A stretch of DNA of 61,530 nt from Macrostomum lignano (lineage: Eukaryota): NCBI GenBank assembly GCA_002269645.1, contig NIVC01004080.1, positions 1-61,530 of the forward strand, written 5' to 3'. Numbering within the stretch: the first letter of the stretch is position 1; each line of letters begins with the position of its first letter. Position numbers and translations under genes: made by a program. Below, piece by piece: positions 12,085-61,065 of this stretch. The notes under the pieces are model-generated. The model saw nothing but the letters and a program-made list of their open reading frames with translations. It was not told the origin of the DNA and did not search any database.

Positions 12085-12650
12085 TCTGCTTCCCGGCGTC
12101 CGCAAGGATCTGTGGCGTCGCCGCGGGCTTGCCTGGGCTGTCTGTCGTTCTTTGGGGGAAGTCCTGCAGTCCAGAGGCCTGTCCTGTACCTGACTGCCAG
12201 TGGGCAGCGTTGTTCCAGGTGGTGGTCGAGACCGTCCTGCTGTACAACGCTGAAACCTAGAGGCTGACGGATGCACTCGAGCAACACTTAGACGGGCCTT
12301 GGCGTTCCTGCTGCTCGCTGCCATCAAGATCGGCGATGGGGGAGTCACCAAATGCGGCACTGTATCGCCACCCCGGTCTGGTCCGCCCAAGCGACCTGAT
12401 GTGCGATCGGCGACTCCAGCTGGCGCCTCCATCCGCGCCACTACAGGCACCCTACTGGCTGGGATGTCGTCGACTTCCTGCTGGCTGACGCCGGCGCCCC
12501 GGATTCGGTCGGCGGCGTGGTCATCGTTCGCCACCTATCCCAGAGGCGCGCCCTGCGAGGCTGCCTTCTAATGACCCTGACAGTGTATTTTTACGAGCTA
12601 TTTGGTTGTTGTTACTGTTGTTGTTGTTGTTTTTGTTGTTGTCTCTAGTT
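12085..12650 (+). mobile_element. 5'-truncated, decayed non-LTR retrotransposon (RTE-like) 3' end with (GTT)n tail
   Basis: Broken reading frames give RRRGLAWAVCRSLGEVLQSRGL, AALFQVVVETVLLYNAET*RLTDALEQHLDG, DRRLQLA and LADAGAPDSVGGV. These resemble the C-terminus downstream of the RT domain in RTE-clade LINEs. There is an in-frame TAG, frameshifts, and a gttgttgtt tail at ~12604-12645. Confidence 0.75.
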
Positions 12651-13881
12651 GTCTCATTGGCTTGTTGTTCAAGCTTTGTTATTCTTTACGAGTACAAGCG
12701 ACAGAAGTTTTGCAATGTCAGCTAATCGTTTACCTCGTCGGTCTGGTTCCTGACGTTCGAAAGGCTTGCCTATAGTTTTGTGAGGGTGGGTCCTGCAGTC
12801 CGAGTACCACCAGTCCTTCGGAGGATGATACTGTAGTGTCGTTGACCCAGTTGGTGGTCGAGGCCGTACTACTTGAACGCTGACGAACGAGCTTAGTCCA
12901 ACGACCTTACTTACGCTTTCGCTGCGATACTTACGTTTTTGTGAGTTGTCCTTTTCTCAAAGATGCCCTTAAGATCAGCGACGACCGAATCTTATTGTCC
13001 GTAGACGGTGAAGGAGGTGCTGCTGACGCCGTATGCACCATACAAAGACCACTAGTGGTCCTTGACACCCCACCGTCGAGGACTGGCGCACATTCAGCAG
13101 GATTTGGTCGGCGACGCTGCCTACGAGTATGTTCGCGTTTGCGCTCAAGCCTGAGGTGCGGTCTGCACCGCTGCTCTCATTTACCTTAGGACCTGCGTGA
13201 CAGACAACGTATCTTGTTGCTGTTCATTAATAAAATCAGTTAATCAAGCAGTTAGGAATACTTCGTATGATGACTTCATAGACATGGCACCATCTGAGTT
13301 TGTCAAATCAACAGGCCATAAAAATTGTGATTCACACTGTTGATGAACTTTAAGTATTGATTGAGCGGAAAATTATGAGACAAGTCTGTCATATTGTGTA
13401 TTTTAGCATTTCAAGTTCCGCAGATACTATGAGTGTTGAGTTAATGGGTAGTAACTGTCATCTGCTAGTAGGAAGGACATCAATATCCTTAGTGACTAGT
13501 TAGAAAGAATGGATTTCTTTGAAGTCTAAATTCTTGTCGTTCAAGAAATTAAGAAAAAGGGCAAAATAAAAAGCGACTTTCAAGTGCCACCTGAACAGGA
13601 AACCCCATTTGTGTGAAGCCTAAAATTGTTTGGCGAAATTTCCGGAAAACATCGCTCCCATTTAATGGGAAGCATACGAGCTAAAATTTTGAGTGGCTTG
13701 CGAATTTTGCAGTATTCCAGTGCAGAGCTCCCATAAATGGGAAGCATGTAGGGCCGGCGAATCCTGCAGTATTCCTGTGCAGAGCTCCCATAAATGTGAA
13801 TCCTTTAGGTAATTTTGACTTCACTACAGAGCCTCGGTCAGGACACAATGCAGCAGGAGAGCTCTTATCTTATGTGAGAGC

Positions 13882-13946
13882 GCGCGCACAAAACGTAGCG
13901 TTATCGTGGGGGCCGCCTGGTCTATAAATACAACAGGGCTGCGCGC
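13882..13946 (+). promoter_or_regulatory. Core promoter of the metallothionein-like gene: TATA box and two MRE-consensus sites
   Basis: TATAAAT at 13923..13929. TGCRCNC matches at 13882..13888 (minus strand) and 13940..13946 (plus strand). ATG at 14035. Confidence 0.6.
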
Positions 13947-14034
13947 TGCCTCTGAGCCAAGGACAGCAAAGCAGATACTCCTGTTTTCCTCTACTTCCAA
14001 GTGATTGCTCTACGCCACCCGACTATCAATAGCT

Positions 14035-14352
14035 ATGGAGAAGCCTACCTGCATCAATTGCAAGCGCGATTGCGAGGCCTGCGAGTGCGAGACTTGCATC
14101 TGCGAGAAATGCGAGTGCGACACCTGCGAGTGCGACCATTGCGAGTGCGACAACTGCGAGTGCGAGACCTGCGACTGCACGGACGGTACCTGCAAGTGCG
14201 GCCAAAGCAAGTGCAGCAATGCCACCTGCAAGAATGCCACGTGCAAGATCAACGACCGTAGGACCTGCGTGTGCAAGACCTGCGTGTGCAAGACCTGCGT
14301 GTGCAAGACCTGCAAGTGCGAGACCTGCGTGTGCTGCAAGACATGCAAGTGA
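14035..14352 (+). CDS. Metallothionein-like protein, 105 aa with 34 Cys, intronless
   Basis: MEKPTCINCKRDCEACECETCICEKCECDTC...CVCKTCKCETCVCCKTCK. It has CxC/CxxC motifs, no aromatic residues and no signal peptide. TATA and MRE motifs lie upstream and AATAAA is at 14571. Confidence 0.8.
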   Translation: MEKPTCINCKRDCEACECETCICEKCECDTCECDHCECDNCECETCDCTDGTCKCGQSKCSNATCKNATCKINDRRTCVCKTCVCKTCVCKTCKCETCVCCKTCK

Positions 14353-15049
14353 AGAAACTGGACCGAGAGACCACATGCTACCAGTGACTTCAGCCTTCCC
14401 GTGACTTGAAACGCTAGGGATCCCCAAATTACTTTAAATATGTGTTCCGAGATTTACCTATACAAAAGGACTACAAAATTACATATTGTTTTTTTTATTC
14501 GAGCCTGTTAATAACTCATCAATGCTTCAATAATTTTGACAGATTAAGAACAAATTGCTTAAAGACAACAAATAAACTACCAAAGTAATTATATTAAAGG
14601 GTCTACCTACTGCAAACATTACACAGGTCTCATCTTATTAGCTTAATTGATATCGTTTGAAGCTTATGCCCATTTACACATTCAACATCGGCTTACATGT
14701 ACATAATACTCACGTAAATGTGCTCACGATGAAGTCGCTAGAGTAATGAATTGAAGGCGACGAGATCTTCGGCGAGGTGGCACCCAACTAATAGTCGTAG
14801 AAGCCGCGGATATTAGAATATATACATTTACAAGGTTTGCGAAACCCTAAGCATCTTACCTTCGTTCCTTCATTTTTGTTCTGGGAAGATAGAAGTCGGT
14901 TAATTTTGGCTTGTTCTGGCTTCTGCTGAATAAACGCTCGTTTTTTACTACTTGCGCAGTCAATAGCGACGTTCATTATATATTTTCCTAAATTTCCAAT
15001 AATCTAAAAAAACAAATTTTGGGGTTCGTTCTTTCTTCTATAAAGCTCT

Positions 15050-15127
15050 GCTGCTTCCTAATGACTAGCTGAACGACCTTCTGCGCCGTGATCGGTGGTT
15101 CGAGACTTCGAGTTGGCAGCGACTTTT
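15050..15127 (+). pseudogene. Degenerate tRNA-like sequence (possible TCT anticodon) or SINE head
   Basis: 72-nt stretch with GCTGC...GCAGC terminal pairing, ACGAC-CTTCTGC-GCCGT stem-loop, GGTTCGAGAC B-box-like motif and a TTTT tract after it. D and T stems pair poorly. Confidence 0.3.
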
Positions 15128-16526
15128 CCGCGCTGAGCCATACCACCCACAGCCTGATGTATAACATGCTGTTGCTAATGCTGCAGCTACTCTTCCAACG
15201 AGGACAGACAGAGGGTTACACCTGCCTCCTGGGCTCTGTCTCACTATGACGCATGACGGCGATGTGACCTATATAATAGATACTTTCTCATCCAGGCCTC
15301 GTGTCATGCCACTCTGATTTTCAGAATAATTGTTTGAGTATCAACTTACTTGGTTTCGATTTTTCACGATTGGATGCTCCAAACATCTAATTAACGTCTG
15401 ACTCATCAATCCTCCCGTTTGACCCATTGGACTAAATTTTAAAGTTATGCATAAAGAAATTAGGTGGTTGAAGAACTACAGAACGTTCCAATTGGCAAAA
15501 TTTTTCGTCGAAAAATCGAATTTTCATAATCAAATTTTAAACTCAACTAAAGCAAGCATCCAGATCTTCATTGGTGCGAGTTTTAGTCAATTTCAGTTTT
15601 CGCGTCTAGTTATAACAAAAACAAAATTAGGCACGTGTTCAAATTCGCAACCATACAACATTTTTTATAACTTAATGATAAATTCTAATATATCATGCTT
15701 ATGTTGATTATTATAAAAATGAAATTAAAAAAGCTCCTACTTAATATCATACCATATCATACCATCGTTTTAGGGGCTGCTCTGGACCTGTATTGTATTT
15801 TTATGTGTTGGTAAATTAGTATAATATTAAATTAGTGTAGCCTAACTTTAATCCACTAAATTTTGGACAATTGGTCTATTGGCATCCAACAGTTGTTCTA
15901 CTAACTGCAAGTCCTTGCTCTGTATAAGGTATTATGATTATATTTTATAATTTAGGTTCATAGGTAATACATTGTATCAAAGATAGGCTTATCATTACTC
16001 CTTAGTTTTAAAAGGCCATCTTATACTAATATACATAATAGGCCTAGTCTATTTATATCTAAGCTAGGCCTCCTTACCCTTGTAAACAAGATTAGGTCTA
16101 AGCTAGCCTACATAAGACATAATTCTAATTTCTAACAAATAGCCAAACATAGTATAATAGGCTCTTATTAATTAATAATTTAATATTAGGCTATATAGTT
16201 AAATTGTGTTTTATATATTTGAATTCATATCATAAACCAATTATAATACAATACCTATTACAGTCTATACCTTATGCCTGTGGCTATGCCATGGTCTATT
16301 TATTTAACTATTTTCCATTTGCAATTATCTAATATTAAAAATTTCAAGTTTAAACAAGTTATAATAAATAAAATTAGAATTATTAGAATCTAACAGATTC
16401 AAATCATATGTATTGTTTTGTTTCATTAATTCAATAGGCCTATTCACTTTTCAACTAGGCTTGGGCCTATACTAATAAAGTCTATGTTATATACTTAAAG
16501 CTATATTATAAATAGGCTTTTTATGT

Positions 16527-17175
16527 GGCTTCCAGTCAATTCGGCGACAAGCCAATTCGGCGACAACCAATTCGGCGACAAGTCAGTTTGGCGACAGCCA
16601 ATTTGGCGAATGCTAATTAAGGCGAATTAAGGCGGATCATTGCATAAAGCTACTATAAGTCATTAAATTTTACATATGTATAGTTGTATACGCATAGCCA
16701 TTCAACCCTGACCATTTATTATAGAAAAATTGTTTTAACTATGTCAAATCGCACATTTTCAAAAAAGTTTATAACATTTTATGCTTTCCACAGAGACATT
16801 AGGCATGGCATATGCTGGGGGGATACATGGACATGTATACCATTTTCCCACCTGACCCAACATAATAGGCTTAAATAGTTTGATGGTTGGTTATTTAGGA
16901 TTATTATTATATTTTATATTTACAATAATATACTAGGTTGGTTTGCAGCATTTGTCAAGAAAAAATTGCCACTAAATTGCTACCGATCGCCATTGATTTG
17001 CTGGCGGCTTTTCAAGAGGGAAATTCTTGTACTTGTATCTCAACATTTGTTTTACTGAAATACGTTTGACATTTAAAACCAGTAAAAAGCCTGTCGCCAA
17101 ACTGACTGTCGCCGAATTGACTTGTCGCCGAATTGGCTGTTGCCGAGTTAACCTGTCGCCAAATTAACTGGTTCC
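16527..17175. mobile_element. Non-autonomous MULE-like MITE, about 650 bp
   Basis: The left end has tandem aattcggcgaca units (16527-16610) and the right end has the inverse tgtcgccgaatt units (17090-17175). Flanks tttttatgt (16518-16526) and cttctatgt (17176-17184) match at 7 of 9 positions, consistent with a 9-bp TSD. Confidence 0.75.
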
Positions 17176-18110
17176 CTTCTATGTTATCTAGATAAATTTA
17201 TAGAATTTAAAGTTATGCTTTTGTTTTGATATCATATATGATATAAATTAAAAAGCAAATATAAATATGGATTTTACTATATGAATAATGAATATTTATA
17301 TTGTTTTAGCAAAAGGTATTATGACTAGTCTCAAAATAGTAGAATTTTTTGTTTTTTTATGTATTAATAATATTTAACTAAAGTTTCCTCTTACAAATGA
17401 TAATTTAAATTAAAAAAATAAGAAAATAAAATTTATATATTTCTATCTAGCTAGGCCTATAGCTAATAAGCCATAAATCAAATCAAATATCATTTAAAAA
17501 CATGAAATAGTTTTATCTTGATTAGATCTAGTAGCTAAATAATATATTTAAGTATTTTGTTCTTTATCTTTTTATATAGACTAGATTATACTAATAAAAA
17601 GCAATAAAAAGCAATAAAAAAGCAATTTGTTACTTAATAGAATAAATTAGTATTAAAACCAAAAATTTTATTCCTTTTACCATGTGTTGATTTTCTTAGT
17701 TTTTTGTTATATTTAGAATATACATATCAATTTTTAAAAAATGTACTAGGCCATCTCATTAGTAACTAATAGGTTGATATCAGCATAGATTAATCATATT
17801 ATGACAGCTTCATACTTAAATAGCAACTTGAATTTGCATTGTCAATAGATTAAAAATGGTTAAATGATTCTAAAGCTTCTATAGTGCATAGTTGTCTTCT
17901 TAAACCTAAAGCTTAATGTTCTCAATATCAGTACCACTCTTAATTTTTAGAATATATTTAGTATATTTGGTTGTATGAACTAGTTGACCACTTGGGCATG
18001 CATATGAGGAAGCATTGGCATCCATTGTGCTTGACTATTGTCACTTTTGGTACCTGAGAATTTTCCCTTTGATACTTGACAACACCGATGACCTTCAGGC
18101 GGCCCAGTCC

Positions 18111-20832
18111 ATGTTCGTGGTGCTGGTGCACCCCAGCCTGAAGCTGTTCGTCCGCGCCCTCAACTCCCTTGCTCGGCTGGGCGACGAGCTCTACCTGGAG
18201 TTCGACACTACCGGAGTCCTGGCCAAGACCGTCAACTCCGGCCGCTCCGCCTACGCCGAGTTCACCTTCCAGCCCGAGTTCTTCCACCGCCACTGCCTGG
18301 CTGACGCCTCCGACCGGCCCGAGGAGTCGCTGCGCTGCAAAATTCCCGTCAAAGCCTACAGGCAGACGTTTCGGTCGCTGGGCCACATCGACCGATCTGT
18401 GGAGCGGTGCCGCATCGAGCTGGACGGACCGGCCAGGCGGCTTACGGTGGGTGCTTCTCGCATGCAGATAACCCGGTGAAAACGATTCCTAGGCTAAGAA
18501 AGCGTCCCAGAGTCACCTGCATCGCCGCAGAGTCGTTGCAGCTAAATTTCCAAGAAGCGACTCTAAAACGACAAGATGTCACGGTACAAGTTGCCAAAAG
18601 AGTCGCCTGAGAGCCAAGTTGAGAGGTTTGATTGCCTGCGACTCTGAAACGAATTTGGAACGACTCTGGGGCTACTTGAGCTAGCAAAACGAATTTGGAA
18701 CGACTCTGGGGCTACTTGAGCTAGCAAAACGAATTTGGAATGACTCTGGGGCTACTTGAGCTAGTAAAACGAATTTGGAACGACTCTGGGGCTACTTGAG
18801 CTAGTAAAACGAATTTGGAACGACTCTGGGGCTACTTGAGCTAGTAAAACGAATTTGGAACGACTCTAGGGCTACTTGAGCTAGTAAAACGAATTTGGAA
18901 GGACTCTGGGGCTACTTGAGCTAGTAGAAAGTTAACCGCTAACACAGTAAACTCTTGGACCACTTTTTTATGCGACTCTTACGATTCTGCAACTCGCGTG
19001 AGGCGCTCGTGACTCAACTGTTGCCTCTCTGTCGCATTGCAGTCGTTTGAGTCACACCAGAGTCGCTAGAGTCACCAGTGAGTTGTTTGCTATGAATCTT
19101 TAGCTTTAGATTGTTGTGTCACGGTAACGTTTTCAAGGGGTAATCCGAAATTTACCACTAATCTTGTCCGGTTTTTATCCCACTAATGATGGCCTTGTAC
19201 TAACCGCGGCCAGCTCTGCTTAACTTGGAACCCCGGCGCCTATCGCAGGTGCAATTCCAGTGCCGCATGGGCATCAGCAAGCTGCACCAGCTGTACGTGC
19301 TGGAGTGCGAGTGCCTGCAGGCGGTGGTCCCGCTGCCAACCGGCCGCTTCACCCGCCTGTCCATCCGGCCGAAGCTGCTGGCCGACCTGGTGATGCAGAA
19401 TTTCCAGACCTCCCAGGAGGAGCTGACGGTGACCTGCCAGCCCCGGGCCTGCGTCATCTGCAGCTACTGCGACAACGGCGTGCCGGCTGCCGGCTCCGTG
19501 CAGACTTCGCTCAGCCTTCGGCCGGACGAGTTTCACGAATACCGGCCGTCCGGGTCCAAGGGTGTCACCTTCTGCCAGCGGGAGCTCCGCTGCCTCCTCA
19601 TGTTTGGCGACTGGCAGGTGCGACCTTGTCTCGTTTGCAGGATCCGCTGTTAGAACTCGCCCTCTCTATTAGAATCCGCCCTCTCTTTTAGAATCCGCCC
19701 ACTCTATTAGAATCCTCCCACTCTATTAGAATCCTCCCACTCTATTAGAATCCTCCCACTCTATAAGAATCCACCCTCTCTATAAGAATCCACCCTCTCT
19801 ATTAGAATCCGCCTACTCTATTAGAATCCGCCCCTGTTAGTATCCGTCCCCTGTTAGAGTCCACCCCTATTAAAATCCACCTCTGATCCACCCTTAAAAT
19901 CCACCCTCTATTAGGATCCGCCTCTGGTAAAATCAACCCTCTATTAGGATCCGCCCCCTCCTTATTAGAATCAGCCCCCTCCTTATTAAAATGTGCCCCC
20001 TACTTTTTAGAATCCGCCCCTCCTTATTAGAATCCGCCCCAGCACGCCGATCTCCAATGAGCCGTCGCCCCCACCAAACTCCCAGGCGCCGGCCTCATTC
20101 CCCCTGGAGATCGAATTCGAGCGGCCCGGCCGCCCTGTCCAGTTCCACTACCGCTGCCCGGAGATGGCTTTTGAAGGCCGCTACGTGCTGTCCACCCTGG
20201 CCGAGCCTCAGTCGGCCTCCGCGACCGGCCGCAGCGCCGGGCCGATCTCGGACACCGAGTCCGAGCTGAAGGCCGACCCCGGCTCCCAGCTGACCGTCAC
20301 GACATCGTCCCTGACGGACGGACCTTCGAGCCGGCGGCAGCGCCACCAGCCAGCCAGCCGGAATCAGAAGCGGCCGGCCGCCGCGCTTCTGTCGCCTTCG
20401 CCGACTTCCCGAGCCTCTCAGAGCAGCAGCGGCCCCCGATCCGCGGTGCTGGAGAATCTGCCGCCACCGGCGCCGCGACAGCCTGCCGCCTTCGCCGAGG
20501 AGGAGGAGGAGGAAGATGACGAAGGCGACGAGACCATCGGCCCGGAGGACGTGGCGGCGGCGGCGGCGGCCTCTGCGTCGTCCCGCGGAGGCCGCAAGCC
20601 GCTGCTGTCGATGCTGCAGGCCGATTCGCCAGAGCAGCAGCCGGACAGTCCGGCCAGTGACGCCCAGCAGCAGCCGCTGTGGTCGCCGCACTCGCCCGTC
20701 TTCGGCGGACCTCCGCCTGGCCGATTTGCCGACCGCCGGGCCGCCGGCGGCTGTCGCGAGCGGCAGAGGCGGCCGCCGGCTCCACTGTCGACCTCTCGAA
20801 TTCTGGTGCCGGACTCGGACGGCGAGGACTGA
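18111..20832 (+). CDS. RAD9: RAD9 checkpoint clamp subunit (9-1-1 complex), about 483 aa, 3 exons
   Basis: Exons 18111..18446, 19249..19617 and 20086..20832, with both introns GT-AG and phase 0. Motifs LARLGDELYLE, TVNSGRSAYAEF, LRCKIPVK, ECECLQAV, VTFCQRELR, FERPGRP and FEGRYVLSTL align with Rad9. The acidic C-terminal LVPDSDGED resembles the Rad9 TopBP1-binding phosphosite tail. Confidence 0.95.
18472..19140. mobile_element. MITE-like element in RAD9 intron 1 with TAA flanks
   Basis: Ends CCCGGTGAAAACG and CGTTTTCAAGGGG form an imperfect inverted repeat. TAA is present on both sides (18469-71 and 19141-43). Confidence 0.5.
18647..18925. repeat. 40-bp tandem repeat, about 7 copies
   Basis: Unit aaaacgaatttggaacgactctggggctacttgagctagt. 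Confidence 0.95.
19650..20040. repeat. Degenerate ~19-21-bp minisatellite in RAD9 intron 2
   Basis: Repeated ttagaatccgccc(t/a)ctcta. Confidence 0.9.
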
Positions 20833-21159
20833 CGCAGAGTTCCCGAGTCAATTTTGTAGCATTTGAATCGCTGGCATTTCACCATAGCGGTTTTTTTCTT
20901 GTCTTTTTTGACACTTGGGTTTTGTTGGTCACTTTTTTTGTTTGCTCTCAGCTCCCTTATTCCAGCTTGCCGTCTACTTCCAGTAGTGCAGTTTTCGCGT
21001 TCGCATTTTTAAATCTTAAAATATAAAACATGGCTTAAAGTTTAGCGAAATTTGGTTTTAACTTTTAATTTTTTGTTACGCTCGCTTTGGCCTACTGGTT
21101 TGAATTGAGCTTGTTGAGGACATGGGTTTTTAGCCAGATGCGTCACTGGGTATCACGGC

Positions 21160-23078
21160 ACCACCCCAATCACAGTGCCACCCCCCAATCACAGTGCCAC
21201 CCCCCAATCACAGTGCCACCCTCCAACCACAGTGCCACCCCCAATCACAGTGCCACCACCCCAATCACAGTGCCACCCCCCAATCACAGTGCCACCACCC
21301 CAATCACAGTGCCACCACCCCAATCACAGTGCCACCCCCCAATCACAGTGCCACCCTCCAACCACAGTGCCACCCCCAATCACAGTGCCACCACCCCAAT
21401 CACAGTGCCACCCCCCAATCACAGTGCCACCACCCCAATCACAGTGCCACCACCCCAATCACAGTGCCACCACCCCAATCACAGTGCCACCCTCCAACCA
21501 CAGTGCCACCCCCCAATCACAGTGCCACCCTCCAACCACAGTGCCACCCCCCAATCACAGTGCCACCCCCAATCACAGTGCCAGCCACCCAATCACAGTG
21601 CCACTACCCAATCACAGTGCCAGCCACCCAATCACAGTGCCACCCCCAATCACAGTGCCAGCCACCCAATCACAGTGCCAGCCCCCCCCCCCCAATCACA
21701 GTGCCAGCCACCCAATCACAGTGCCACTACCCAATCACAGTGCCAGCCACCCAATCACAGTGCCACCCCCAATCACAGTGCCAGCCACCCAATCACAGTG
21801 CCACCCCCAATCACAGTGCCAGCCACCCAATCACAGTGCCACCACCCCAATCACAGTGCCACCCTCCAACCACAGTGCCACCCCCCAATCACAGTGCCAC
21901 CCTCCAACCACAGTGCCACCCCCCAATCACAGTGCCACCCTCCAACCACAGTGCCACCCCCCAATCACAGTGCCACCCCCAATCACAGTGCCAGCCACCC
22001 AATCACAGTGCCACTACCCAATCACAGTGCCAGCCACCCAATCACAGTGCCACCCCAATCACAGTGCCAGCCACCCAATCACAGTGCCACCCCCAATCAC
22101 AGTGCCAGCCACCCAATCACAGTGCCACCACCCAATCACAGTGCCACCCTCCAACCACAGTGCCACCCCCAATCACAGTGCCACCCTCCAACCACAGTGC
22201 CACCCCCCAATCACAGTGCCACCTCCAACCACAGTGCCACCCCCCAATCACAGTGCCACCCCCAATCACAGTGCCAGCCCCCCCCCAATCACAGTGCCAG
22301 CCACCCAATCACAGTGTCACTACCCAATCACAGTGCCAGCCACCCAATCACAGTGCCACTACCCAATCACAGTGCCAGCCACCCAATCACAGTGCCACCC
22401 CCAATCACAGTGCCAGCCACCCAATCACAGTGCCACCCTCCAACCACAGTGCCACCCTCCAACCACAGTGCCACCCTCCAATCACAGTGCCACCCCTAAT
22501 CACAGTGCCACCCCCCAATCACAGTGCCAGCCACCCAATCACAGTGCCACCCCCAATCACAGTGCCAGCCACCCAATCACAGTGCCACCCTCCAACCACA
22601 GTGCCACCCTCCAATCACAGTGCCACCCCTAATCACAGTGCCACCCCCCAATCACAGTGCCAGCCACCCAATCACAGTGCCACCCCCAATCACAGTGCCA
22701 GCCACCCAATCACAGTGCCACCCCCAATCACAGTGCCAGCCCCCCCCCCAATCACAGTGCCAGCCACCCAATCACAGTGCCAGCCACCCAATCACAGTTC
22801 CAGCCACCCAATCACAGTGCCACCCCCAATCACAGTGCCACCCCCAATCACAGTGCCAGCCACCCAATCACAGTGCCACCCCCAATCACAGTGCCAGCCC
22901 CCCCCAATCACAGTTCCAGCCACCCAATCACAGTGCCAGCCACCCAATCACAGTTCCAGCCACCCAATCACAGTGCCACCCCCAATCACAGTGCCAGCCA
23001 CCCAATCACAGTTCCAGCCACCCAATCACAGTGCCACCCCCAATCATAGTGCCAGCCCCCAATCTCGGTGCCACCCCT
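21160..23078. repeat. ~18-20-bp minisatellite of about 1.9 kb between RAD9 and RIC8
   Basis: Unit core ccaatcacagtgcca followed by variable C-runs. Confidence 0.97.
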
Positions 23079-23178
23079 GTCGAATAAGCCGCAGACAGAG
23101 TGGCAGCTTCGCCAGGCGCCACTACTAACAGTAGCATGTAAAAACTCCTCTGCCATCAGTTGCAGCCCTATCGACGCC

Positions 23179-25358
23179 ATGACCAGCCAACCGCTGCAGC
23201 TGCCCCTGTCGGATCCTCCGGCACCGGACGCTGATCCGGCCACCGTGGCCACCGCCTTCTCGGCCTCTGAGCAGAAGCTGTCCGAATTCTCAGTTAAACA
23301 GTTTAGCAATTTCCGGCCAGCCCTGGCCGAGCCGGAAGCGGACATTGGCCGGCTGTTGGCCCACCTGAGCCGGCCGGATCTGCCAACCGGCCTGGCCGTC
23401 CTCTGCCTTCGCTGCCTCCGCCTGCTGTGCCGCCACCGGCCCAACCTGGAGGCCTGCGACCCCGCCAGGTTCCTGGAGGCCGGCCTGGCCTGCCTACTTG
23501 ACCGAAGCGGCCTGGCCGACCTGGCCGATGGCGGCAACGCTGAGCCGCAGCAGCGACCTGTCGAGGAGGTGACTGAGAGCCTGATGTGCCTGTGCAACCT
23601 CGGCATCCAGCTGGACGGCCTGGTGCAGCGGCTTGTCGACCTTCGCTGTCCAGCGGCGCTGCTCCGCCGGGCCGCCGGCCTCACCGCCGAGAGCCTCGAG
23701 CTGGACTGGCCGGCCTTCGACCTTCGCCTGCTGTTCCTGCTGGCCGCCAAGTGTCCGGCTGCCCGGCAGGACCTCCGGCTGCATCGCCGAGGCGTCGCTC
23801 AGCTCACCCAGCTGCTGCAGCTGGCCAGCGAGCCTCGGCTGCTCTCCGACAAGAGGTGCGACCTGCTTGGCGACCTGGTCAAAGTTCTCTACACACTGGC
23901 TGCCGGCACTGCGGGGCCCGGCGATAAAGACGATTCTTTGGTGAGCCACTCTTGGAGCTTTGCTCACAGTCTTCGTCTCAGTCCTTGTTCTCAGTCCTTG
24001 TTCTTCGTATTTGTTCATAATGCTTGTTATTAGTCCTTTTTCTTAGTCTTTGTTCTTAGTCTTTATTCTTAGTCTTTGTTCTTAGTCCTTGTTCTTAGTC
24101 TTTGTCTTAATCTTTATCTTAGTCCTTGTTGTTAGTCCTTGTTGTTAATCTTTGTTGTTAATCTTTGTTGTTAGTATTTGTTCTTAGTCCTTGTTCTTAG
24201 TCCTTGTTCTTAGTCCTTGTTCTTAGTCCTTGTTCTTAGTCCTTGTTCTTAGTCCTTGTTCTTAGTCTTGCCCCTCCTTGCAATCGCTGCCAGGCCGAGG
24301 GCGAGGAGACCGTCTTCCATCAGCTGGCGGGACTGCTGCGCCGCCTCCTGCTGGCTGACTGCACCAGCCCAGACAGACGGGACCGCCTCACCCAGCACTG
24401 CGTCAGCCTGCTGCTCTGCCTGCCGCAGGACAGCTTCGACCGCCTGCTTAGCGAGGACGTCCCAGCCGCCGCTTCTTCAGCAGCGTCGACAGCGTCCAAC
24501 TTTGAAGGCAAAGGCGTTGAAGCCATCGACGTTGTGCTGAACCTGCTGGACACTCGGCTGGCTCTGTTCTCGGCCTCGTGCACCGCCGACCCGGCCGCCG
24601 TCGCTGCCGTCCTGCCGGCGGGGGTCAGCCTGACTGGCGGCGCCTTGGAGAACCTGGTGCCGGTGCTGTCCGCCCTGTTCGAGGCCTGCCGGTCTTCGCG
24701 GACCATTCGGCGATACTGCAAGCACCGGCTGCTGCCCAGGCGGAGCTCCGATCAGATGGCCCAGCTGCCCGAGGAAGGTCAGCATGTCTCCTGATTGCTG
24801 ACCCACCTGTGTGATTTCTGACCCATCTGTGTGATTGCTGACCCACCTGTGTGATTGCTGACCCACCTGTGTGATTGCTGATACATATCAGATTCTTGGC
24901 CTACCAGTGCAGTCTATGATCCAGTTTTCCCATCGCTAACCAAGTTCACCTTGCTAACCAATTTGCCTGGTTTATCTCTGCTCAAAATTTGCAATAGTGA
25001 GTACTGTAGCTTCCACCATTCCCGCGCAGGCGCCTCCATGCGCAGCCGCCTGTGCCGCACGCTGACGCACCCGTGCACCCAGGCTGCCGACATGGCCGCC
25101 TCGCTGGTGCACGCGCTGTGCAAGGCCAGCATCGCCAGGGCTGTCCGCCACACCGGCTACGGCAACTTCGCCGGCTTCCTGGCCCGCCGCGGCCTTCTGG
25201 CTGCCGGTCCGTCGGCTGGGGACTCAACGGTGTACAGCTCCGACTCCTCCGGAGACGGCGAGGACGAGGACGAGGATGATGGAGCGGGGGCTGCCGATCA
25301 ACAGGGCGGCGCGGCGGACGGAGGCAGGGCGAACGGAGGTAGGCAGACATGACATAGG

Positions 25359-31054: not shown

Positions 31055-33668
31055 GATTTATGAGAATTCTTGTGAGATTTAAGAATTCTTTTGAGATTTA
31101 TGAGAACTATTGTGAGATTTATGAGAATTCTTGTGAGATTTATGAGAATTCTTGTGAGATTTATGAGATGCTTGTGAGATTTAAGAATTCTTTTGAGATT
31201 TATGAGATGCTTGGGAGATTTATGAGAGTTCTTGTGAGATTTATGAGAATTCTTGTGAGATTTATGAGAATTCTTGTGAGATTTATGAGAATTCTTGTGA
31301 GAATTAGAAGAAATCTTGTGTGATTTATGAGAATCCCTGTGAGATTTATGAGAGTTCTTGTGAGATTTATGAGAATTCTTGTGAGATTTATGGGAATTCT
31401 TGTGTGATTTATGAGAATTCTTGTGTGATTTATGAGAATTCTTGTGAGATTTATGAGAATTCTTGTGAGATTTATGAGAATTCTTGTGTGATTTATGAGA
31501 ATTCTTGTGTGATTTATGAGAATTCTTGTGAGATTTATGAGAATTATTGTGTTATTTATGAGAATTCTTGTGTGATTTATGAGAATCCCTGTGAGATTTA
31601 TGAGAATTCTTGTGAGATTTATGAGAATTCTTGTGAGATTTATGGGAATTCTTGTGTGATTTATGAGAATTCTTGTGTGATTTATGAGAATTCTTGTGAG
31701 ATTTATGAGAATTCTTGTGAGATTTATGAGAATTCTTGTGTGATTTATGAGAATTCTTGTGTGATTTATGAGAATTCTTGTGAGATTTATGAGAATTATT
31801 GTGTTATTTATGAGAATTCTTGTGTGATTTATGAGAATCCCTGTGAGATTTATGAGAATTCTTGTGAGATTTAGAAGAATTCTTGTGATTTATGAGAATC
31901 CCTGTGAGATTTATGAGAATTCTTGTGACATTTATGAGAATTCTTGTGAGATTTATGAGAATTCTTGTGAGATTTATGAGATTCTTGTGAGATTTATAAG
32001 AATTCTTGTGAGATTTATGAGAATTGTTGTGTGATTTATGAGAATTCTTGTGTGATTTATGAGAATCCCTGTGAGATTTATGAGAATTCTTGTGAGATTT
32101 ATGAGAATTCTTGGTTGATTAATGAGAATTCTTGTGAGATTTATGAGAATTATTGTGAGATTTATGAGAATTCTTGTGCGATTTACATGTATGAGAATTC
32201 TTTGTTTATTTATGAGAATTCTGGTAGATTTATGAGAATTCTTGTGTGATTTATGAGAATTCTTGTGAGATTTATGAGAAGTCTTGTGAGATTTGAGAAT
32301 TCTTTTGAGATTTATGAGAATCCTTGTGTGATTTATGAGAATTCTTGTGAGATTTATGAGAATTCTTGTGCGATTTACATGTATGAGAATTATTTGTTTA
32401 TTTATGAGAATTCTGGGAGATTTATGAGAATTCTTGTGTGATTTATGAGAATTCTTGTGTGATTTATGGGAATTCTTGTGAGATTTATGAGAATTGTTGT
32501 GTGATTTATGAGAATTCTTGTGTGATTTATGAGAATCCCTGTGAGATTTATGAGAGTTCTTGTGAGATTTATGAGAGTTCTTGTGAGATTTATGAGAATT
32601 CTTGTGAGATTTATGAGAATTCTTGGTTGATTTATGAGAATTCTTGTGAGATTTATGAGATTCTTGTGAGATTTATAAGAATTCTTGTGAGATTTATGAG
32701 AATTGTTGTGTGATTTATGAGAATTCTTGTGTGATTTATGAGAATCCCTGTGAGATTTATGAGAATTCTTGTGAGATTTATGAGAATTCTTGTGAGATTT
32801 ATGAGAATTCTTGGTTGATTAATGAGAATTCTTGTGAGATTTATGAGAATTCTTGTGAGATTTATGAGAATTCTTGGTTGATTTATGAGAATTCTTGTGA
32901 GATTTATGAGAATTCTTGTGCGATTTGTGAGATTTATGAGATTCTTGTGAGATTTCTGAGAATACTTGTGTGATTTATGGGAATTCTTGTGAGATTTATG
33001 AGAAGTCTTGTGAGATTTGAGAATTCTTTTGAGATTTATGAGAATCCTTGTGTGATTTATGAGAATTCTTGTGAGATTTATGAGAATTCTTGTTCGATTT
33101 ACATGTATGAGAATTCTTTGTTTATTTATGAGAATTCTGGGAGATTTATGAGAATTCTTGTGTGATTTATGAGAATTCTTGTGTGATTTATGGGAATTCT
33201 TGTGAGATTTTTGAGAATTCTTGTGAGATTTATGAGAATTCTTGTGTGATTTATGAGAATTCTTGTGAGATTTATGAGAATTCCTGGTTGATTTATGAGA
33301 ATTCTTAGGAGATTTATGAGAATTCTTGTGAGATTTAAGAGAATTATTGTGAGATTTATAAGATGCTTGTGAGATTTATGAGATTTCTTTTGAGATTAAT
33401 GAGAATCCTTGTGAGATTTATGAGATGCTTGTGTGATTTATGAGAATTCTTGGGAGATTTATGAGAATTCTTGTGAGATTTATGAGAATTCTTGTGAGAT
33501 TTATGAGAATTATTGTGTGATTTATGAGAATTATTGTGTGATTTATGAGAATTCTAGTGAGATTTATGAGAATTCTTGTGAGATTTATGAGAATTCTTGG
33601 TTGCTTTATGAGAATTATTGTGTGATTTATGAGAATTATTGTGTGATTTATGAGAATTCTTGTGAGAT
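31055..33668. repeat. 21-bp minisatellite of about 2.6 kb upstream of RPA3
   Basis: Unit gagatttatgagaattcttgt. Confidence 0.97.
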
Positions 33669-33752
33669 TCGGAGACAGTCAAGTCTGTGGACGGATTCAC
33701 AGCATACCGCTCCTCAGCAGCCGCCCCACCCTCCAGTTGCAGCCCCCATCAG

Positions 33753-35455
33753 GTCTTGAGCGATGAGCTGTACTTCTATGACAACCGGGCGGACTCTGCG
33801 GTCACCGGCCGTCGCTGCCGCGTCAACGGCCGCCTGCTGACTGCGGGCGCCGGCACTTCCGCGGCCGGAGCTCCGGTCGTCCTCCTGGGCCGGGTGGCCT
33901 CCATCAGCAGCGACTCGCCAACCGGCAGCCGCTGGACGGTGACCGCCTCCGACTCCGTGGAGGTTCGGGTCGCCTTCGCCAGAGGCGCCACGGCGCCTGA
34001 GGTTGCGCCCGGGCAGCTGGTGGAGATCGTGGGGCTGGTGGCGTCCGGCCCGAGTGCCAGGTGCGTTCTGGGGAGTGCGGAGACCACCTTGCCTTGCCGC
34101 CCTCCCAGATCTTCGGTTGCTAGGCTACCGCCACCCTCCAGTTCCCTAGTTGCTGGGCCGCCCTCCCAGATCCTCAGTTGCTGGGCCGCCCTCCCAGATC
34201 CCCAGTTGCTGGGCCGCCCTCCCAGATCCCCAGTTGCTGGGCCAGTCTCCCAGATCCCCAGTTGCTGGGCCGCCCTCCCAGATCCCCAGTTGCTGGGCAA
34301 GCCTCCCAGATCCCCAGTTGCTGGGCCGCCCTCCCAGATCCCCAGTTGCTGGGCAAGCCTCCCAGATCCCCAGTTGCTGGGCAAGCCTCCCAGATCCCCA
34401 GTTGCTGGGCCGCCCTCCCAGATCCCCAGTTGCTGGGCAAGCCTCCCAGATCCCCAGTTGCTGGGCCAGCCTCCCAGATCCCCAGTTGCTGGGCCGCCCT
34501 CCCAGATCCCCAGTTGCTGGGCAAGCCTCCCAGATCCCCAGTTGCTGGGCCAGCCTCCCAGATCCCCAGTTGCTGGGCCGCCCTCCCAGATCCCCAGTTG
34601 CTGGGCAAGCCTCCCAGATCCCCAGTTGCTGGGCCAGCCTCCCAGATCCCCAGTTGCTGGGCCAGCCTCCCAGATCCCCAGTTGCTGGGCCAGCCTCCCA
34701 GATCCTCAGTTGCTGGGCCAGCCTCCCAGATCCCCAGTTGCTGGGCCAGCCTCCCAGATCCCCAGTTTCTGGGCAAGCCTCCCAGATCCCCAGTTGCTGG
34801 GCCAGCCTCCCAGATCCCCAGTTGCTGGGCCAGCCTCCCAGATCCCCAGTTGCTGGGCCAGCCTCCCAGATCCCCAGTTGCTGGGCAAGCCTCCCAGATC
34901 CCCAGTTGCTGGGCCAGCCTCCCAGATCCCCAGTTGCTGGGCCGCCCTCCCAGATCCCCAGTTGCTGGGCCAGCCTCCCAGATCCCCAGTTGCTGGGCCA
35001 GCCTCCCAGATCCCCAGTTGCTGGGCCAGCCTCCCAGATCCCCAGTTGCTGGGCCAGCCTCCCAGATCCCCAGTTGCTGGGCCGCCCTCCCAGATCCCCA
35101 GTTGCTGGGCAAGCCTCCCAGATCCCCAGTTGCTGGGCCAGCCTCCCAGATCCCCAGTTGCTGGGCCGCCCTCCCAGATCCCCAGTTGCTGGGCAAGCCT
35201 CCCAGATCCCCAGTTGCTGGGCCAGCCTCCCAGATCCCCAGTTGCTGGGCAAGCCTCCCAGATCCCATAAGCCCATCTATCCCAGCTTAGCCAGTTCATC
35301 AGCCCCCGCCCGCCTCTGCCCGCAGTCCGGAGATCCGAGTCACAGAGTCGGCCACGGTGTTCTCCGACTCGCAGAGCTCCAGCTTCGACATGGACTTGTA
35401 CAACTCGGCCGTCGAGATCACGGAGAGGCTGCCCCGGTGTTACTATACCCAGTAG
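33753..35455 (+). CDS. RPA3: Replication protein A 14-kDa subunit (RPA3), two exons seen, start codon not in these exons
   Basis: Exon 33753..34060 encodes VLSDELYFY...RVNGRLL...PVVLLGRVASI...GQLVEIVGLV and ends at AG|GTGCGT, phase 2. Exon 35326..35455 encodes PEIRVTES...FDMDLYNSAVEITERLPRCYYTQ*. These match the RPA3 OB-fold motifs RIN..L, V.FVGR, G.VEVVG.V and FDL.LYNEAV. Confidence 0.85.
34097..35265. repeat. 28-bp minisatellite filling the RPA3 intron
   Basis: Unit gcctcccagatccccagttgctgggcca. Confidence 0.97.
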
Positions 35456-35712
35456 ACTTGATGAGATTGCACGTGACTGGCTATCGAAAAGAAACCGAAC
35501 AATCCGTTTACGTCTGTTTTGAAACTAAATACAAGCTAATTGCATTTCTGTAAATGCTGTCTTCTTATTTTAAACTTTTCAGATCGAATACTTGTTGTTA
35601 AGCGAAGTTCCAGATAACTGCAAAATATAGCCGAGTTTTTGAGCCCAGTTTGAATGAATGACCTAAATTGTCACTGCTTTTGTGAGTTGTTCTCTAAGAT
35701 TCTTATTGAAAC

Positions 35713-45135: not shown

Positions 45136-46197
45136 AAATAATATAACCAATGAGAAAAAAAGATTTTGAATAAAGATGGGGGAGATTCGTGAGGTGTTTG
45201 CCGATCGCAGTGAGCATGCTGTCACTAAAAGCAGCTTGGCAGAGCCTGGCTCTCATAACTGGAAATCCAGGAGGTCGATGCTCACAGCGGTGATAAAAAA
45301 CCCCTGCACTCCCCGAGCTCCGAGGCAGCTGGACCACCAGAGCACAGCGGGTCTGGGCAGGAGAGAGAATTAAACTGCTCGGGAGACGGCCGACTCACAG
45401 GCCATCGCTTTATTGTGATGAGGCTGCATGGCCCTGGTGGGACCTGATCCCGCTGACCCCAGCCTCCTGCTGTCCCGTCTCTCTATCCTGTGCTCAAGTA
45501 CCTCCGGCAATTAGCTGGCAAAATACGGGAAGCCTCCGATTAATGAACGGGCAGGTCCGGTGGTGGGGCAGAGAGGCACTGATGAAGCTGGCACGGCCTC
45601 CCAGCCTCCCACGCGCGGCTCAACCACTGGGCCAGGTGAGAGGGGAGAATGCAGTATTGAAGGGATGGCGCGGATGATGAATTGCCTCTCCCCCTGACAA
45701 CAAGCAGACAGCTGCAGCTCGAGCAGAGCCGGTCGCCAGCAAGAGTGCATCTGGGTGGGGCCGCATCAATCTGCGCTAATCCCCCCAGGCTAATTAAATA
45801 ATAATCCGTCACTGCGGATGCCATGGGATCCGCGCCAACCCCGCTGCTCGGTCCGGCTGCCTCTCAATTATTGATGAAGCTGCCGTGCCGCAGCCTCCAG
45901 CGCATCCGCCAAACCCCCTCAGAGATGCCCTGTCCAGCCCTGGCACTTGTCACCTTGGAGCTGTCTGCCCCCCCCTCTGCCCCGGCCTGTCTTCACCTTC
46001 CGTGTTTGCCTGCCGAATCGATCGCTTTGCTGCCTCTGGAAATTCAGGCCAGAAATACTGCAATTTGGCTATTTGTGCGCCTTGACACTTCCTGTGCGGA
46101 CAGCCTGCGCCCGCGTGTGCCTGCGGTATTCACTTAAACTCTTGCCGATCTCCTGTCTGACACTCAGACTGGACTGAACTTCTCTGAGGTACAGTGG

Positions 46198-46756
46198 CTT
46201 GACTGACTGACTGACTGACTGACTGACTGACTGACTGACTGACTGACTGACTGACTGACTGACTGACTGACTGACTGACTGACTGACTGACTGACTGACT
46301 GACTGACTGACTGACTGACTGACTGACTGACTGACTGACTGACTGACTGACTGACTGACTGACTGACTGACTGACTGACTGACTGACTGACTGACTGACT
46401 GACTGACTGACTGACTGACTGACTGACTGACTGACTGACTGACTGACTGACTGACTGACTGACTGACTGACTGACTGACTGACTGACTGACTGACTGACT
46501 GACTGACTGACTGACTGACTGACTGACTGACTGACTGACTGACTGACTGACTGACTGACTGACTGACTGACTGACTGACTGACTGACTGACTGACTGACT
46601 GACTGACTGACTGACTGACTGACTGACTGACTGACTGACTGACTGACTGACTGACTGACTGACTGACTGACTGACTGACTGACTGACTGACTGACTGACT
46701 GACTGACTGACTGACTGACTGACTGACTGACTGACTGACTGACTGACTAACTGACT
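46198..46756. repeat. Near-perfect (GACT)n microsatellite
   Basis: Direct reading. Confidence 0.98.
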
Positions 46757-46811
46757 CCCCAATCCCACTGCAGCCAGGGCCACAGGCGATGCCAGTCACT
46801 GCAGGGGAGTC

Positions 46812-61065
<14,254 letters not shown>

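What the first reader, a model, noticed from the sequence alone, without database searches (positions are those of the whole stretch)
14035..14352. Metallothionein-like protein built from CxCxx pentapeptide repeats with acidic and basic halves
34 of 105 residues are Cys. The N-terminal half is about 7 tandem 15-nt units (tgcgagtgcgacacc-like) encoding acidic CECDx, and the C-terminal part is basic CVCKT repeats, joined by a Cys-sparser linker. This regular five-residue periodicity with opposite charges differs from the classic two-cluster vertebrate metallothionein. It suggests expansion by coding minisatellite and possibly a higher metal capacity.
Basis: partly seen in the sequence, partly recalled or inferred. 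Interest (0 to 1): 0.7.

Follow-up and report, generated by a model that had tools for sequence, protein, structure and literature searches.

The report
Candidate flatworm metallothionein from pentapeptide repeats
A small intronless gene of the flatworm Macrostomum lignano encodes a 105-residue protein that is one-third cysteine and built almost entirely from a repeated five-residue Cys-x-Cys-x-x unit, which makes it a credible but untested candidate for a metal-binding metallothionein in a phylum where none has been described.

Summary
ORF 14035..14352 (+) encodes 105 aa with 34 Cys, all TGC. It has no aromatic residues and one His. The N half has net charge -12 and the C half +10, with 17 Cys in each. 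Both arrays have a 15-nt period. The window is contig NIVC01004080.1 of Macrostomum lignano assembly Mlig_3_7.

Gene status is supported in five ways:
- All differences between repeat units fall outside the Cys codons.
- A collinear second copy on another contig differs by one synonymous base in the CDS, against 2-2.7% in the flanks, and has the same repeat number.
- A TATA box lies 110 bp upstream and the ORF starts at the first ATG.
- AATAAA lies 220 bp downstream.
- The deposited annotation, which appears to be RNA-seq-based, calls this ORF.

The promoter holds the window's only perfect heat-shock element and two TGCGCGC metal-response-like cores beside the TATA box.

No Pfam metallothionein family, PDB chain or database protein matches. 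However, the protein collections seem to lack flatworm proteomes, so this absence is weak evidence. The motif resembles the CKCXXCKC building block of Tetrahymena copper metallothioneins.

Verdict: a probable lineage-specific metallothionein-like gene that grew by coding-minisatellite expansion. Expression, metal induction and metal binding are untested.

The parts
14035..14352 (+). Intronless CDS of 105 aa plus TGA stop: the Cys-rich metallothionein-like protein
   Evidence: The same product is called as a gene in both assembly copies. The second copy differs by one synonymous base, at 14283.
14080..14184 (+). Acidic array: 7 units of 15 nt encoding C-E-C-[DE]-x (residues 16-50, 14 Cys, 13 Asp+Glu)
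   Evidence: All 17 base differences from the consensus (11 distinct variants) lie outside the two Cys codons.
14185..14259 (+). Cys-sparser basic linker (residues 51-75, 5 Cys). It is still 5-residue periodic (Cys 55, 60, 65, 70), so it is a decayed part of the same repeat.
14260..14349 (+). Basic array: x-T-C-V-C / K-T-C-K-C units (residues 76-105, 12 Cys, 7 Lys+Arg), ending in CCKTCK
13925..13930 (+). TATAAA box 110 bp upstream of the ATG. No ATG lies between it and the start codon.
   Evidence: It is identical in the second copy.
13882..13888 (-). TGCGCGC, which matches the metal-response-element core TGCRCNC, 37 bp upstream of the TATA box
   Evidence: Conserved in the second copy.
13940..13946 (+). 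Second TGCGCGC core, 10 bp downstream of the TATA box and in inverted orientation to the first
   Evidence: Two of the window's six TGCGCGC matches lie within 65 bp here.
13635..13647 (.). Perfect trimeric heat-shock element GAAatTTCcgGAA, the only one in the 61.5-kb window, 388 bp upstream of the ATG
   Evidence: Conserved in the second copy.
13695..13808 (+). Two 57-bp direct repeats in the promoter. The first contains a perfect CArG-type CCATAAATGG at 13731-13740.
14571..14576 (+). AATAAA poly(A) signal 219 bp after the stop codon, with ATTAAA at 14593

Best explanation
This is a real, intronless, lineage-restricted gene of Macrostomum lignano. It encodes a cytosolic metallothionein-type protein.

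Shown here: a 105-residue protein with 34 Cys arranged almost only as C-x-C-x-x-C; no aromatic residues; no signal peptide; growth from a single 15-nt founder unit into an acidic (CECDx) and a basic (CVCKT) array.

Inferred mechanism: in the reducing cytosol the 34 thiolates bind soft d10 metal ions (Cu(I), Zn(II), Cd(II)) in metal-thiolate clusters. Using the mammalian ratios from general knowledge (20 Cys for 7 M(II) or about 12 Cu(I)), capacity would be about 11-12 divalent ions or about 20 Cu(I). The Lys-rich C half would neutralise negatively charged clusters, as Lys does in classical metallothioneins. The Glu/Asp-Cys N half resembles a gene-encoded alpha-linked (Glu-Cys)n, that is, a phytochelatin-like chelator. 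The two oppositely charged halves may pack against each other.

Inferred regulation: stress-inducible transcription from a TATA promoter that carries a heat-shock element and two MRE-like cores.
For: Composition and motifs: 32.4% Cys, 13 CxC, 14 CxxC, 1 CC, no F/Y/W, 1 His, 11.6 kDa. The highest Kyte-Doolittle mean over 9 residues in the N-terminus is 0.96, so there is no signal peptide.

Coding constraint: among the 7 acidic units, all 17 differences from the consensus (11 distinct variants) avoid the Cys codons. P is about 1.7e-4, or 3.6e-3 if only distinct variants are counted.

Conservation: the collinear second copy (window 9448-13267 and 13447-15911, 98% and 96.5% identical) has 1 synonymous change in 318 CDS bases. 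The 3' flank has 18/679 substitutions plus 5 indels. P(<=1) is 0.002-0.011. There is no change in repeat number.

Gene signals: TATAAA at -110, first ATG with G at -3 and +4, AATAAA at +219, and GC3 of 0.88 in line with neighbouring genes (0.61-0.80).

Annotation: both copies are called as a 105-aa gene, whereas a 369-aa GPCR ORF nearby is not called. The Mlig_3_7 annotation is RNA-seq-guided with TransDecoder (PMC5730564), which implies transcript support.

Promoter: the window's only perfect heat-shock element lies 388 bp upstream (0.005 expected in 500 bp). Two TGCGCGC cores flank the TATA box.

Precedent: Tetrahymena 7b copper metallothioneins are built from CKCXXCKC (PMC1808422). Fungal CnMT and TmMT were built by tandem amplification of a Cys unit (PMC4755600).
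Against: There is no direct evidence of transcription, metal induction or metal binding.

No Pfam metallothionein family matches at E<=10, and no PDB chain matches.

All three + frames and two of the three - frames are open across the array, and the window is full of minisatellites with open frames, so the ORF alone proves little.

The acidic half is atypical for metallothioneins, and metal loading would make it strongly negative.

TGCRCNC is not enriched over the whole window (55 found, 66 expected). The promoter statistics are post hoc. Whether flatworms have an MTF-1 was not tested.

The low CDS divergence rests on only two copies, and gene conversion could also produce it. The promoter is itself fairly conserved (4/388), and against that rate the CDS is not significantly slower (P = 0.16).

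The AlphaFold model is uninformative (pLDDT 45).
Confidence: 0.55

Rival explanations
1. It is a real gene, but the protein is a Cys-rich structural or cross-linking protein rather than a metal buffer. Its cysteines would form disulfides in a hardened intracellular structure such as the stylet, sperm parts or eggshell precursors. The analogy is mammalian ultra-high-sulfur keratin-associated proteins, which are also built of Cys-rich pentapeptide repeats.
For: The protein has five-residue periodicity and more than 30% Cys. From my own knowledge, keratin-associated proteins share these two properties. A perfect CArG-type box lies in the promoter repeat, which could point to tissue-specific rather than stress-driven expression. 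No metallothionein family profile matches.
Against: There is no signal peptide, so the protein would sit in the reducing cytosol. The motif is CxC/CxxC with flanking Lys or Glu, as in metallothioneins, and not the CC-x-P-x unit of keratin-associated proteins. It has only one Pro, two Gly and no Tyr, which are residues typical of structural Cys-rich proteins. A heat-shock element and MRE-like cores in the promoter suit a stress gene.
Confidence: 0.17
2. It is not a functional gene. A 15-nt minisatellite happens to be open in a Cys-encoding frame, and it was either picked up by annotation from spurious transcription or is a very young de novo ORF without an established function.
For: The window holds many minisatellites that are open in several frames. 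Five of six frames are open across this array. A metagenome scan shows that CECDx arrays arise repeatedly as simple 15-nt satellites in unrelated DNA: 25 loci, mostly perfect repeats or short inserts in unrelated proteins. No homologue was detected.
Against: Variation among units avoids the Cys codons. The non-repeat N-terminus and the linker also keep Cys spacing. The CDS has one synonymous difference against 2-2.7% in the flanks and no copy-number change between the copies, which is unusual for a neutral minisatellite. It has a TATA box, starts at the first ATG, has a poly(A) signal and shows gene-like codon usage.
Confidence: 0.18
3. It is a zinc-binding regulatory or redox protein rather than a bulk metal store. 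Examples would be a zinc-cluster adaptor or a thiol redox buffer induced by heat or oxidative stress.
For: A heat-shock element lies in the promoter. The opposite charges of the two halves could mediate binding to partners. The Cys density suits redox buffering.
Against: No match to any zinc-finger or CXC-domain family in Pfam. The uniform repeat without a defined fold (pLDDT 45) is more typical of metallothioneins. In practice this role overlaps with accepted metallothionein functions.
Confidence: 0.1

Closest known systems
Tetrahymena metallothionein subfamily 7b (copper metallothioneins MTT2/MTT4 type)
   Same: Both are built by reiterating a CxCxxCxC block (CKCXXCKC). Both have essentially no CC or CCC clusters, have Lys next to Cys, and exceed 100 residues as a result of internal repeat expansion (PMC1808422). 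The C-terminal half here (CVCKTCVCKTCVCKTCKCETC) follows the same pattern.
   Different: No detectable sequence homology. The hosts are a ciliate and a flatworm. In the ciliate proteins, spacers of 2-5 residues separate the blocks, whereas here the 5-residue period is strict. The ciliate proteins have no acidic (CECDx) half.
Vertebrate metallothionein (Pfam PF00131), beta domain
   Same: Both are small, Cys-rich and lack aromatic residues. From my own knowledge, the mammalian beta domain contains a local CKCKECKCTSC run with the same CxCxxCxCxxC spacing. Metal-response elements near the TATA box are the classical regulatory feature, and two core matches are present here.
   Different: No profile match. 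The vertebrate protein has 20 Cys in two non-repetitive domains of 61-62 residues and a gene with introns. Here there are 34 Cys in a periodic 105-residue protein from an intronless gene with charge-segregated halves.
Fungal high-capacity copper thioneins (Cryptococcus CnMT1/2, Tremella TmMT)
   Same: These are long metallothioneins made by tandem amplification of a Cys-rich unit, which gives extraordinary metal capacity (PMC4755600).
   Different: [quoted passage not shown] Here the unit is 5 residues (15 nt) and the gene has a single exon.
Phytochelatins and synthetic (Glu-Cys)n peptides
   Same: The N half (CECECETCICEKCECDTCECDHCECDNCECETC) is largely alternating acidic residue and Cys, like (gamma-Glu-Cys)n. 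Flatworms are known to carry phytochelatin synthase as a proposed substitute for metallothionein (PMC3101182 and PMC3561135).
   Different: Phytochelatins are made enzymatically with gamma-peptide bonds and are 5-23 residues long. This is a ribosomal alpha-peptide with a Thr, Asn or His spacer at every fifth residue.
Ultra-high-sulfur keratin-associated proteins
   Same: Pentapeptide periodicity, more than 30% Cys, and size of about 100-200 residues (my own knowledge, not tested here).
   Different: Their unit is CC-x-P-x with disulfide cross-linking in cornified cells. Here the unit is CxC with charged spacers, and there is one Pro in the whole protein.

Membership tests
Metallothionein (operational definition: small, Cys-rich, metal-thiolate protein) | Low molecular mass (classically under 10 kDa, although longer multi-repeat forms are accepted) | tested here: met
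   105 aa and 11.6 kDa. This is slightly above the classical limit but within the range of ciliate and fungal metallothioneins.
Metallothionein (operational definition: small, Cys-rich, metal-thiolate protein) | High Cys content (about 15-35%) in CxC, CxxC and CC motifs | tested here: met
   34/105 = 32.4% Cys, with 13 CxC, 14 CxxC and 1 CC.
Metallothionein (operational definition: small, Cys-rich, metal-thiolate protein) | Absence or scarcity of aromatic residues and His | tested here: met
   No Phe, Tyr or Trp, and one His.
Metallothionein (operational definition: small, Cys-rich, metal-thiolate protein) | Binds several d10 metal ions in thiolate clusters | not testable with these tools
   This needs recombinant protein analysed by ESI-MS, ICP and CD. 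The AlphaFold model without metals has pLDDT 45.
Metallothionein (operational definition: small, Cys-rich, metal-thiolate protein) | Transcription induced by metals or stress | tested here: inconclusive
   Two TGCGCGC (TGCRCNC) cores flank the TATA box and one perfect heat-shock element lies at -388. These are motif matches only. The motif is not enriched window-wide, and no expression data are available.
Any sequence-defined metallothionein family (the Pfam metallothionein models, e.g. PF00131) | Significant match to the family profile | tested here: not met
   hmmscan against Pfam-A returned 0 families at E<=10. PDB sequence search returned 0 hits at E<=10. The protein is therefore not a member of any curated metallothionein family.
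Tetrahymena metallothionein subfamily 7b | Elementary motif CKCXXCKC, essentially no CC clusters, and Lys next to most Cys (Table 1 of PMC1808422) | tested here: inconclusive
   CxCxxCxC occurs 10 times and CC once. Lys adjoins Cys only in the C half, and Glu or Asp takes that place in the N half. There is no homology, so this is a resemblance and not membership.
Secreted disulfide-rich repeat proteins (e.g. beetle antifreeze-type beta-solenoids) | N-terminal signal peptide | tested here: not met
   The N-terminus MEKPTCINCKRDCEAC is polar. The highest 9-residue Kyte-Doolittle mean is 0.96.

The most novel reading that the evidence does not exclude
This would be the first metallothionein of the phylum Platyhelminthes. 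It would have arisen de novo within the Macrostomum lineage by expansion of a single 15-nt unit, and it would have an architecture not seen elsewhere: a gene-encoded phytochelatin-like (Glu/Asp-Cys)n half fused to a classical Lys-Cys half. The two oppositely charged halves would zip together around a large metal-thiolate core, under combined heat-shock and metal control.
Probability: 0.3. Interest if true: 0.7.

Novelty: new variant of a known kind. Interest (0 to 1): 0.5.

Why it matters
Flatworms are a noted gap in metallothionein biology. [quoted passage not shown]

A 2024 review of M. lignano as a marine toxicology model reports Cu and Cd toxicity data. It names GST as a biomarker and does not mention metallothionein (PMC11641670).

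If this gene is a working metallothionein, it would offer three things:
- A metal biomarker for that model.
- A compact promoter of about 600 bp that may be inducible by metal or heat, in a flatworm for which efficient transgenesis has been reported (PMC5730564).
- A clean example of a metal-binding protein born from a coding minisatellite, with a natural acidic versus basic contrast for studying how residues next to Cys tune metal preference.

Tried and rejected
**Homology searches**
- Word-indexed protein search: no hit.
- PDB sequence search: no hit.
- Pfam: no hit.
- Exhaustive phmmer against 1.84 billion representative proteins: one hit, P0001.
- Control: a Rad9 exon from the same window also found nothing in the word-indexed search, and the exact protein is not in the collection. 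The collection behind that search therefore appears to lack M. lignano and close flatworms, and the representative library is drawn from a like-described collection. I do not read these negatives as 'no homologue in flatworms'.

**P0001 (964-bp JGI metagenome contig, L003)**
- It matches the N half at 52% identity over 48 aa, including CxNCxRD.
- Its ORF continues into a non-Cys tail, and the contig is too short to interpret.
- It is not used as evidence of a family.

**Metagenome scan for the coding pattern CECDxCECDxCEC**
- It returned 25 loci. All were simple 15-nt satellites or short arrays inside unrelated proteins.
- I rejected them as relatives. They are useful only as a control showing that such arrays arise easily.

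**Structure prediction**
- Mean pLDDT was 45, so I did not run a fold search, which would have been meaningless.

**Transposable-element origin of the HSE-bearing promoter**
- M. lignano LTR retrotransposons are reported to use the heat-shock response.
- I rejected this origin because the two copies are collinear over about 6.4 kb that includes the neighbouring GPCR gene.

**Longer gene with upstream exons**
- I rejected this because an in-frame TGA at 14002-14004 directly precedes the ORF.

**Literature**
- Searches for a described flatworm or M. lignano metallothionein, and for the peptide strings themselves, found nothing.

**Bacterial tools**
- The bacterial promoter/terminator scan and the phage, plasmid and E. 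coli collections were not used, because the window is an animal genome.

Full report
**Where the window comes from.** An exact-protein look-up places the ORF on two contigs of GenBank assembly GCA_002269645.1. One is NIVC01004080.1, which is 61,530 bp and therefore the window itself. The other is NIVC01003265.1. Several papers identify that accession as Mlig_3_7, the genome assembly of the free-living marine flatworm Macrostomum lignano. The rest of the window fits an animal genome. It has no tRNA or Rfam hits. It contains an ABCA-like transporter (2537-7283, -), a rhodopsin-type GPCR ORF (10179-11288, -), Rad9 (from 18015, +) and Ric8 (23068-24794, +). It also contains many long minisatellites that are open in several reading frames.

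**The observation.**
- Translation of 14035..14352 gives a 105-residue protein with 34 Cys (32.4%), all encoded by TGC.
- There are no aromatic residues and one His.
- Residues 1-50 have net charge -12 and residues 51-105 have +10, with 17 Cys in each half.
- Calculated mass is 11.6 kDa.
- Tandem Repeats Finder finds a 15-nt array at 14066-14178 (7.5 copies) and another at 14262-14334 (4.9 copies). It also finds 15-nt periodicity inside the 'linker'.

When the protein is written in pentads, nearly all of it is periodic:
- CxCxx units in residues 16-50.
- Single Cys every fifth residue at 55, 60, 65 and 70.
- xxCxC units in residues 76-100.

The acidic unit (TGCGAGTGCGAGACC, CECET) matches the basic unit (TGCGTGTGCAAGACC, CVCKT) at 13 of 15 bases. 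It matches the CKCET unit inside the basic array at 14 of 15 bases. Both arrays therefore descend from one 15-nt founder. Two or three substitutions (Glu to Val, Asp/Glu to Lys) followed by separate amplification produced the charge dichotomy.

**Is it a gene or just a repeat with an open frame?** The ORF alone is weak evidence. All three + frames and two of the three - frames are open across the array, and the window has many such repeats. Four independent lines favour a real gene in this frame.
1. *Cys-codon invariance.* Among the seven acidic units, all 17 differences from the consensus fall in the three non-Cys codons and none in the 42 Cys-codon bases. P is about 1.7e-4, or 3.6e-3 if only the 11 distinct variants are counted. 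The four differences in the basic array also avoid Cys codons.
2. *Conservation between copies.* The second contig is a collinear copy of the locus. Window 9448-13267 and 13447-15911 align at 98% and 96.5%. This fits the two to four paralogous copies reported for most of this neopolyploid assembly (PMC10733133).
   - The CDS differs at one synonymous base (14283, TGC/TGT).
   - The 3' flank has 18 substitutions and 5 indels in 679 bp.
   - The proximal promoter has 4 substitutions in 388 bp.
   - Against flank rates, P(<=1 change) is 0.002-0.011. Against the promoter rate alone it is 0.16.
- The repeat number is identical in both copies, which a neutral minisatellite would not be expected to keep.
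3. *Gene signals.* TATAAA lies at 13925, 110 bp upstream, and no ATG lies between it and the start codon. The start context is ATAGCTATGG, with G at -3 and +4. An in-frame TGA at 14002-14004 closes the frame upstream. AATAAA lies at 14571. GC3 is 0.88, and the TGC/GAG/AAG preference matches neighbouring genes.
4. *Annotation.* The gene table for the deposited assembly calls exactly this 105-aa product on both contigs but omits the nearby 369-aa GPCR ORF. The Mlig_3_7 annotation was built from a genome-guided RNA-seq assembly with TransDecoder (PMC5730564). This suggests that a transcript exists. That step is an inference; I could not see reads.

**What the protein most likely does.** It has no signal peptide and would therefore stay in the reducing cytosol. 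It meets every compositional criterion of a metallothionein: small size, about one-third Cys, CxC and CxxC motifs (13 and 14 occurrences, one CC), and no aromatic residues.

The most likely mechanism is binding of soft metal ions in metal-thiolate clusters. Using the mammalian ratios from general knowledge, 34 thiolates would hold about 11-12 divalent ions or about 20 Cu(I). This is an estimate, not a result.

The Lys-rich C half looks like a classical metallothionein segment. The N half, which largely alternates Glu or Asp with Cys, resembles a ribosomally made phytochelatin-like (Glu-Cys)n. Dominance of CxC with almost no CC is the signature of the copper-induced Tetrahymena 7b subfamily (PMC1808422). 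That gives a slight lean toward Cu(I), but metal preference is open.

**Regulation.** The promoter is suggestive.
- The window's only perfect trimeric heat-shock element (GAAatTTCcgGAA, 13635-13647) lies 388 bp upstream of the ATG. About 0.66 are expected per window, or about 0.005 in any given 500 bp.
- Two TGCGCGC matches to the metal-response core TGCRCNC lie in inverted orientation on either side of the TATA box, at 13882-13888 (-) and 13940-13946 (+).
- The degenerate core is not enriched window-wide (55 found, 66 expected). However, two of the window's six TGCGCGC matches lie within 65 bp here.
- A 57-bp direct repeat at 13695-13808 carries a perfect CArG-type CCATAAATGG.
- All of these elements are identical in the second copy.

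These are motif matches found after the fact. Whether M. lignano has an MTF-1 was not tested.

**Comparison with what is known.** No curated family claims the protein.
- Pfam-A gives no hit at E<=10.
- The PDB gives none.
- The word-indexed search of 5.8 billion protein clusters gives none.
- An exhaustive phmmer search of 1.84 billion representatives gives a single hit (E = 3.5e-5).

That single hit is an ORF on a 964-bp metagenome contig. It begins MGVCANCERDKCECAKCESDRCECDNCECDKCECANCECANG and then loses all Cys. It is 52% identical to the N half over 48 residues, but the contig is too short to interpret.

A scan of 241 million metagenome records for DNA encoding CECDxCECDxCEC found 25 loci. 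Most are perfect 15-nt satellites or short arrays inside unrelated proteins, and none is a whole small Cys-rich protein.

One caveat matters. A Rad9 exon from this window also found nothing, and the exact protein is not in the collection. These protein collections therefore seem not to contain M. lignano or its close relatives. The lack of homologues says little about other flatworms.

Functionally and architecturally the nearest precedents are:
- Tetrahymena 7b copper metallothioneins (CKCXXCKC repeats).
- Fungal high-capacity copper thioneins built by tandem amplification (PMC4755600).

The protein is not a member of either family.

**Rival readings.**
- A disulfide cross-linked structural protein, analogous to the pentapeptide-repeat keratin-associated proteins. 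The cytosolic location, the CxC-plus-charge motif and the stress-type promoter make this less likely. It cannot be excluded without localisation data.
- A non-functional minisatellite ORF. Cys-codon invariance, CDS conservation and the gene signals argue against it, but it retains some weight because expression is only inferred.
- A redox or zinc-handling role. This overlaps with accepted metallothionein functions.

**Novelty and value.** The searchable literature holds no description of a metallothionein from M. lignano or of a sequenced flatworm metallothionein, and none of the peptide strings appears in any paper. Parasitic flatworms are stated not to have metallothionein genes (PMC3561135). 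A 2024 review of M. lignano toxicology does not mention metallothionein.

I rate this a new variant of a known kind. It is a metallothionein-type protein with strict whole-length pentapeptide periodicity and charge-segregated halves, in a phylum where the class has not been described. All functional claims remain untested, so interest is moderate (0.5). Confidence that it is a working metallothionein-type metal binder is about 0.55.

Noticed in passing
window 21087-23128, 31320-31874, 33687-35553, 36333-38293, 46130-46799, 50274-50732, 53721-54569, 57477-58883: Many long minisatellite or microsatellite arrays are open in several reading frames on both strands, giving false 'ORFs' of 150-640 aa. 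Open frames over repeats are common in this genome and should not be read as genes.
   Followed up: partly
window 10179-11288 (-): A 369-aa single-exon ORF matches rhodopsin-family 7tm_1 (E = 3e-10). It is not among the called genes of the locus, so it may be an unannotated or weakly expressed GPCR.
   Followed up: partly
window 2537-7283 (-): Two long ORFs together look like an ABCA-type transporter (ABC_tran E = 3e-34; ABC2_membrane_3) about 6.7 kb upstream of the Cys-rich gene. Nothing indicates a functional link.
   Followed up: no
window 13268-13446 versus L002 3808-4428: The two copies of the locus are collinear except for a replaced segment just upstream of the promoter: 179 bp in the window and 620 bp of G/C-rich short repeats in the other contig. 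Homology also ends at window 15911, where an AT-rich stretch (28% GC, 16001-18000) begins.
   Followed up: partly
L003 565-900 (JGI metagenome 3300031569, contig Ga0307489_10355566): An environmental ORF starts MGVCANCERDKCECAKCESDRCECDNCECDKCECANCECANG and is 52% identical to the N half over 48 aa, including the non-repeat start CxNCxRD. It then continues without Cys. A GT follows the array, so this could be an exon boundary. Its origin is unknown.
   Followed up: partly
L004 and L011 (metagenome contigs), open frames of about 200 aa: Two related environmental proteins begin MDQPGMIANTCECECD[SP]CECD...CECECH and continue into a conserved non-Cys domain. This is an example of a short CECD array used as an N-terminal tag on an otherwise ordinary protein.
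   Followed up: no
window 13984-14004: The polypyrimidine tract plus AG (ttttcctctacttccaag) ending at 14001 looks like a 3' splice or SL trans-splice acceptor 33 nt before the ATG. It is followed at once by an in-frame TGA. About 39% of M. lignano genes are reported to be trans-spliced (PMC5730564).
   Followed up: no
window 14345-14354: The sequence caa|gtgaag around the stop codon resembles a 5' splice donor, so an alternative spliced form with a different C-terminus cannot be excluded. The annotation gives a single exon in both copies.
   Followed up: no
window 18147-18479 (+), used as a control query: A Rad9 exon (Pfam E = 3e-19) found no protein in the 5.8-billion-cluster word-indexed search. 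That collection seems to lack M. lignano and close relatives, which weakens all negative homology results for this window.
   Followed up: yes
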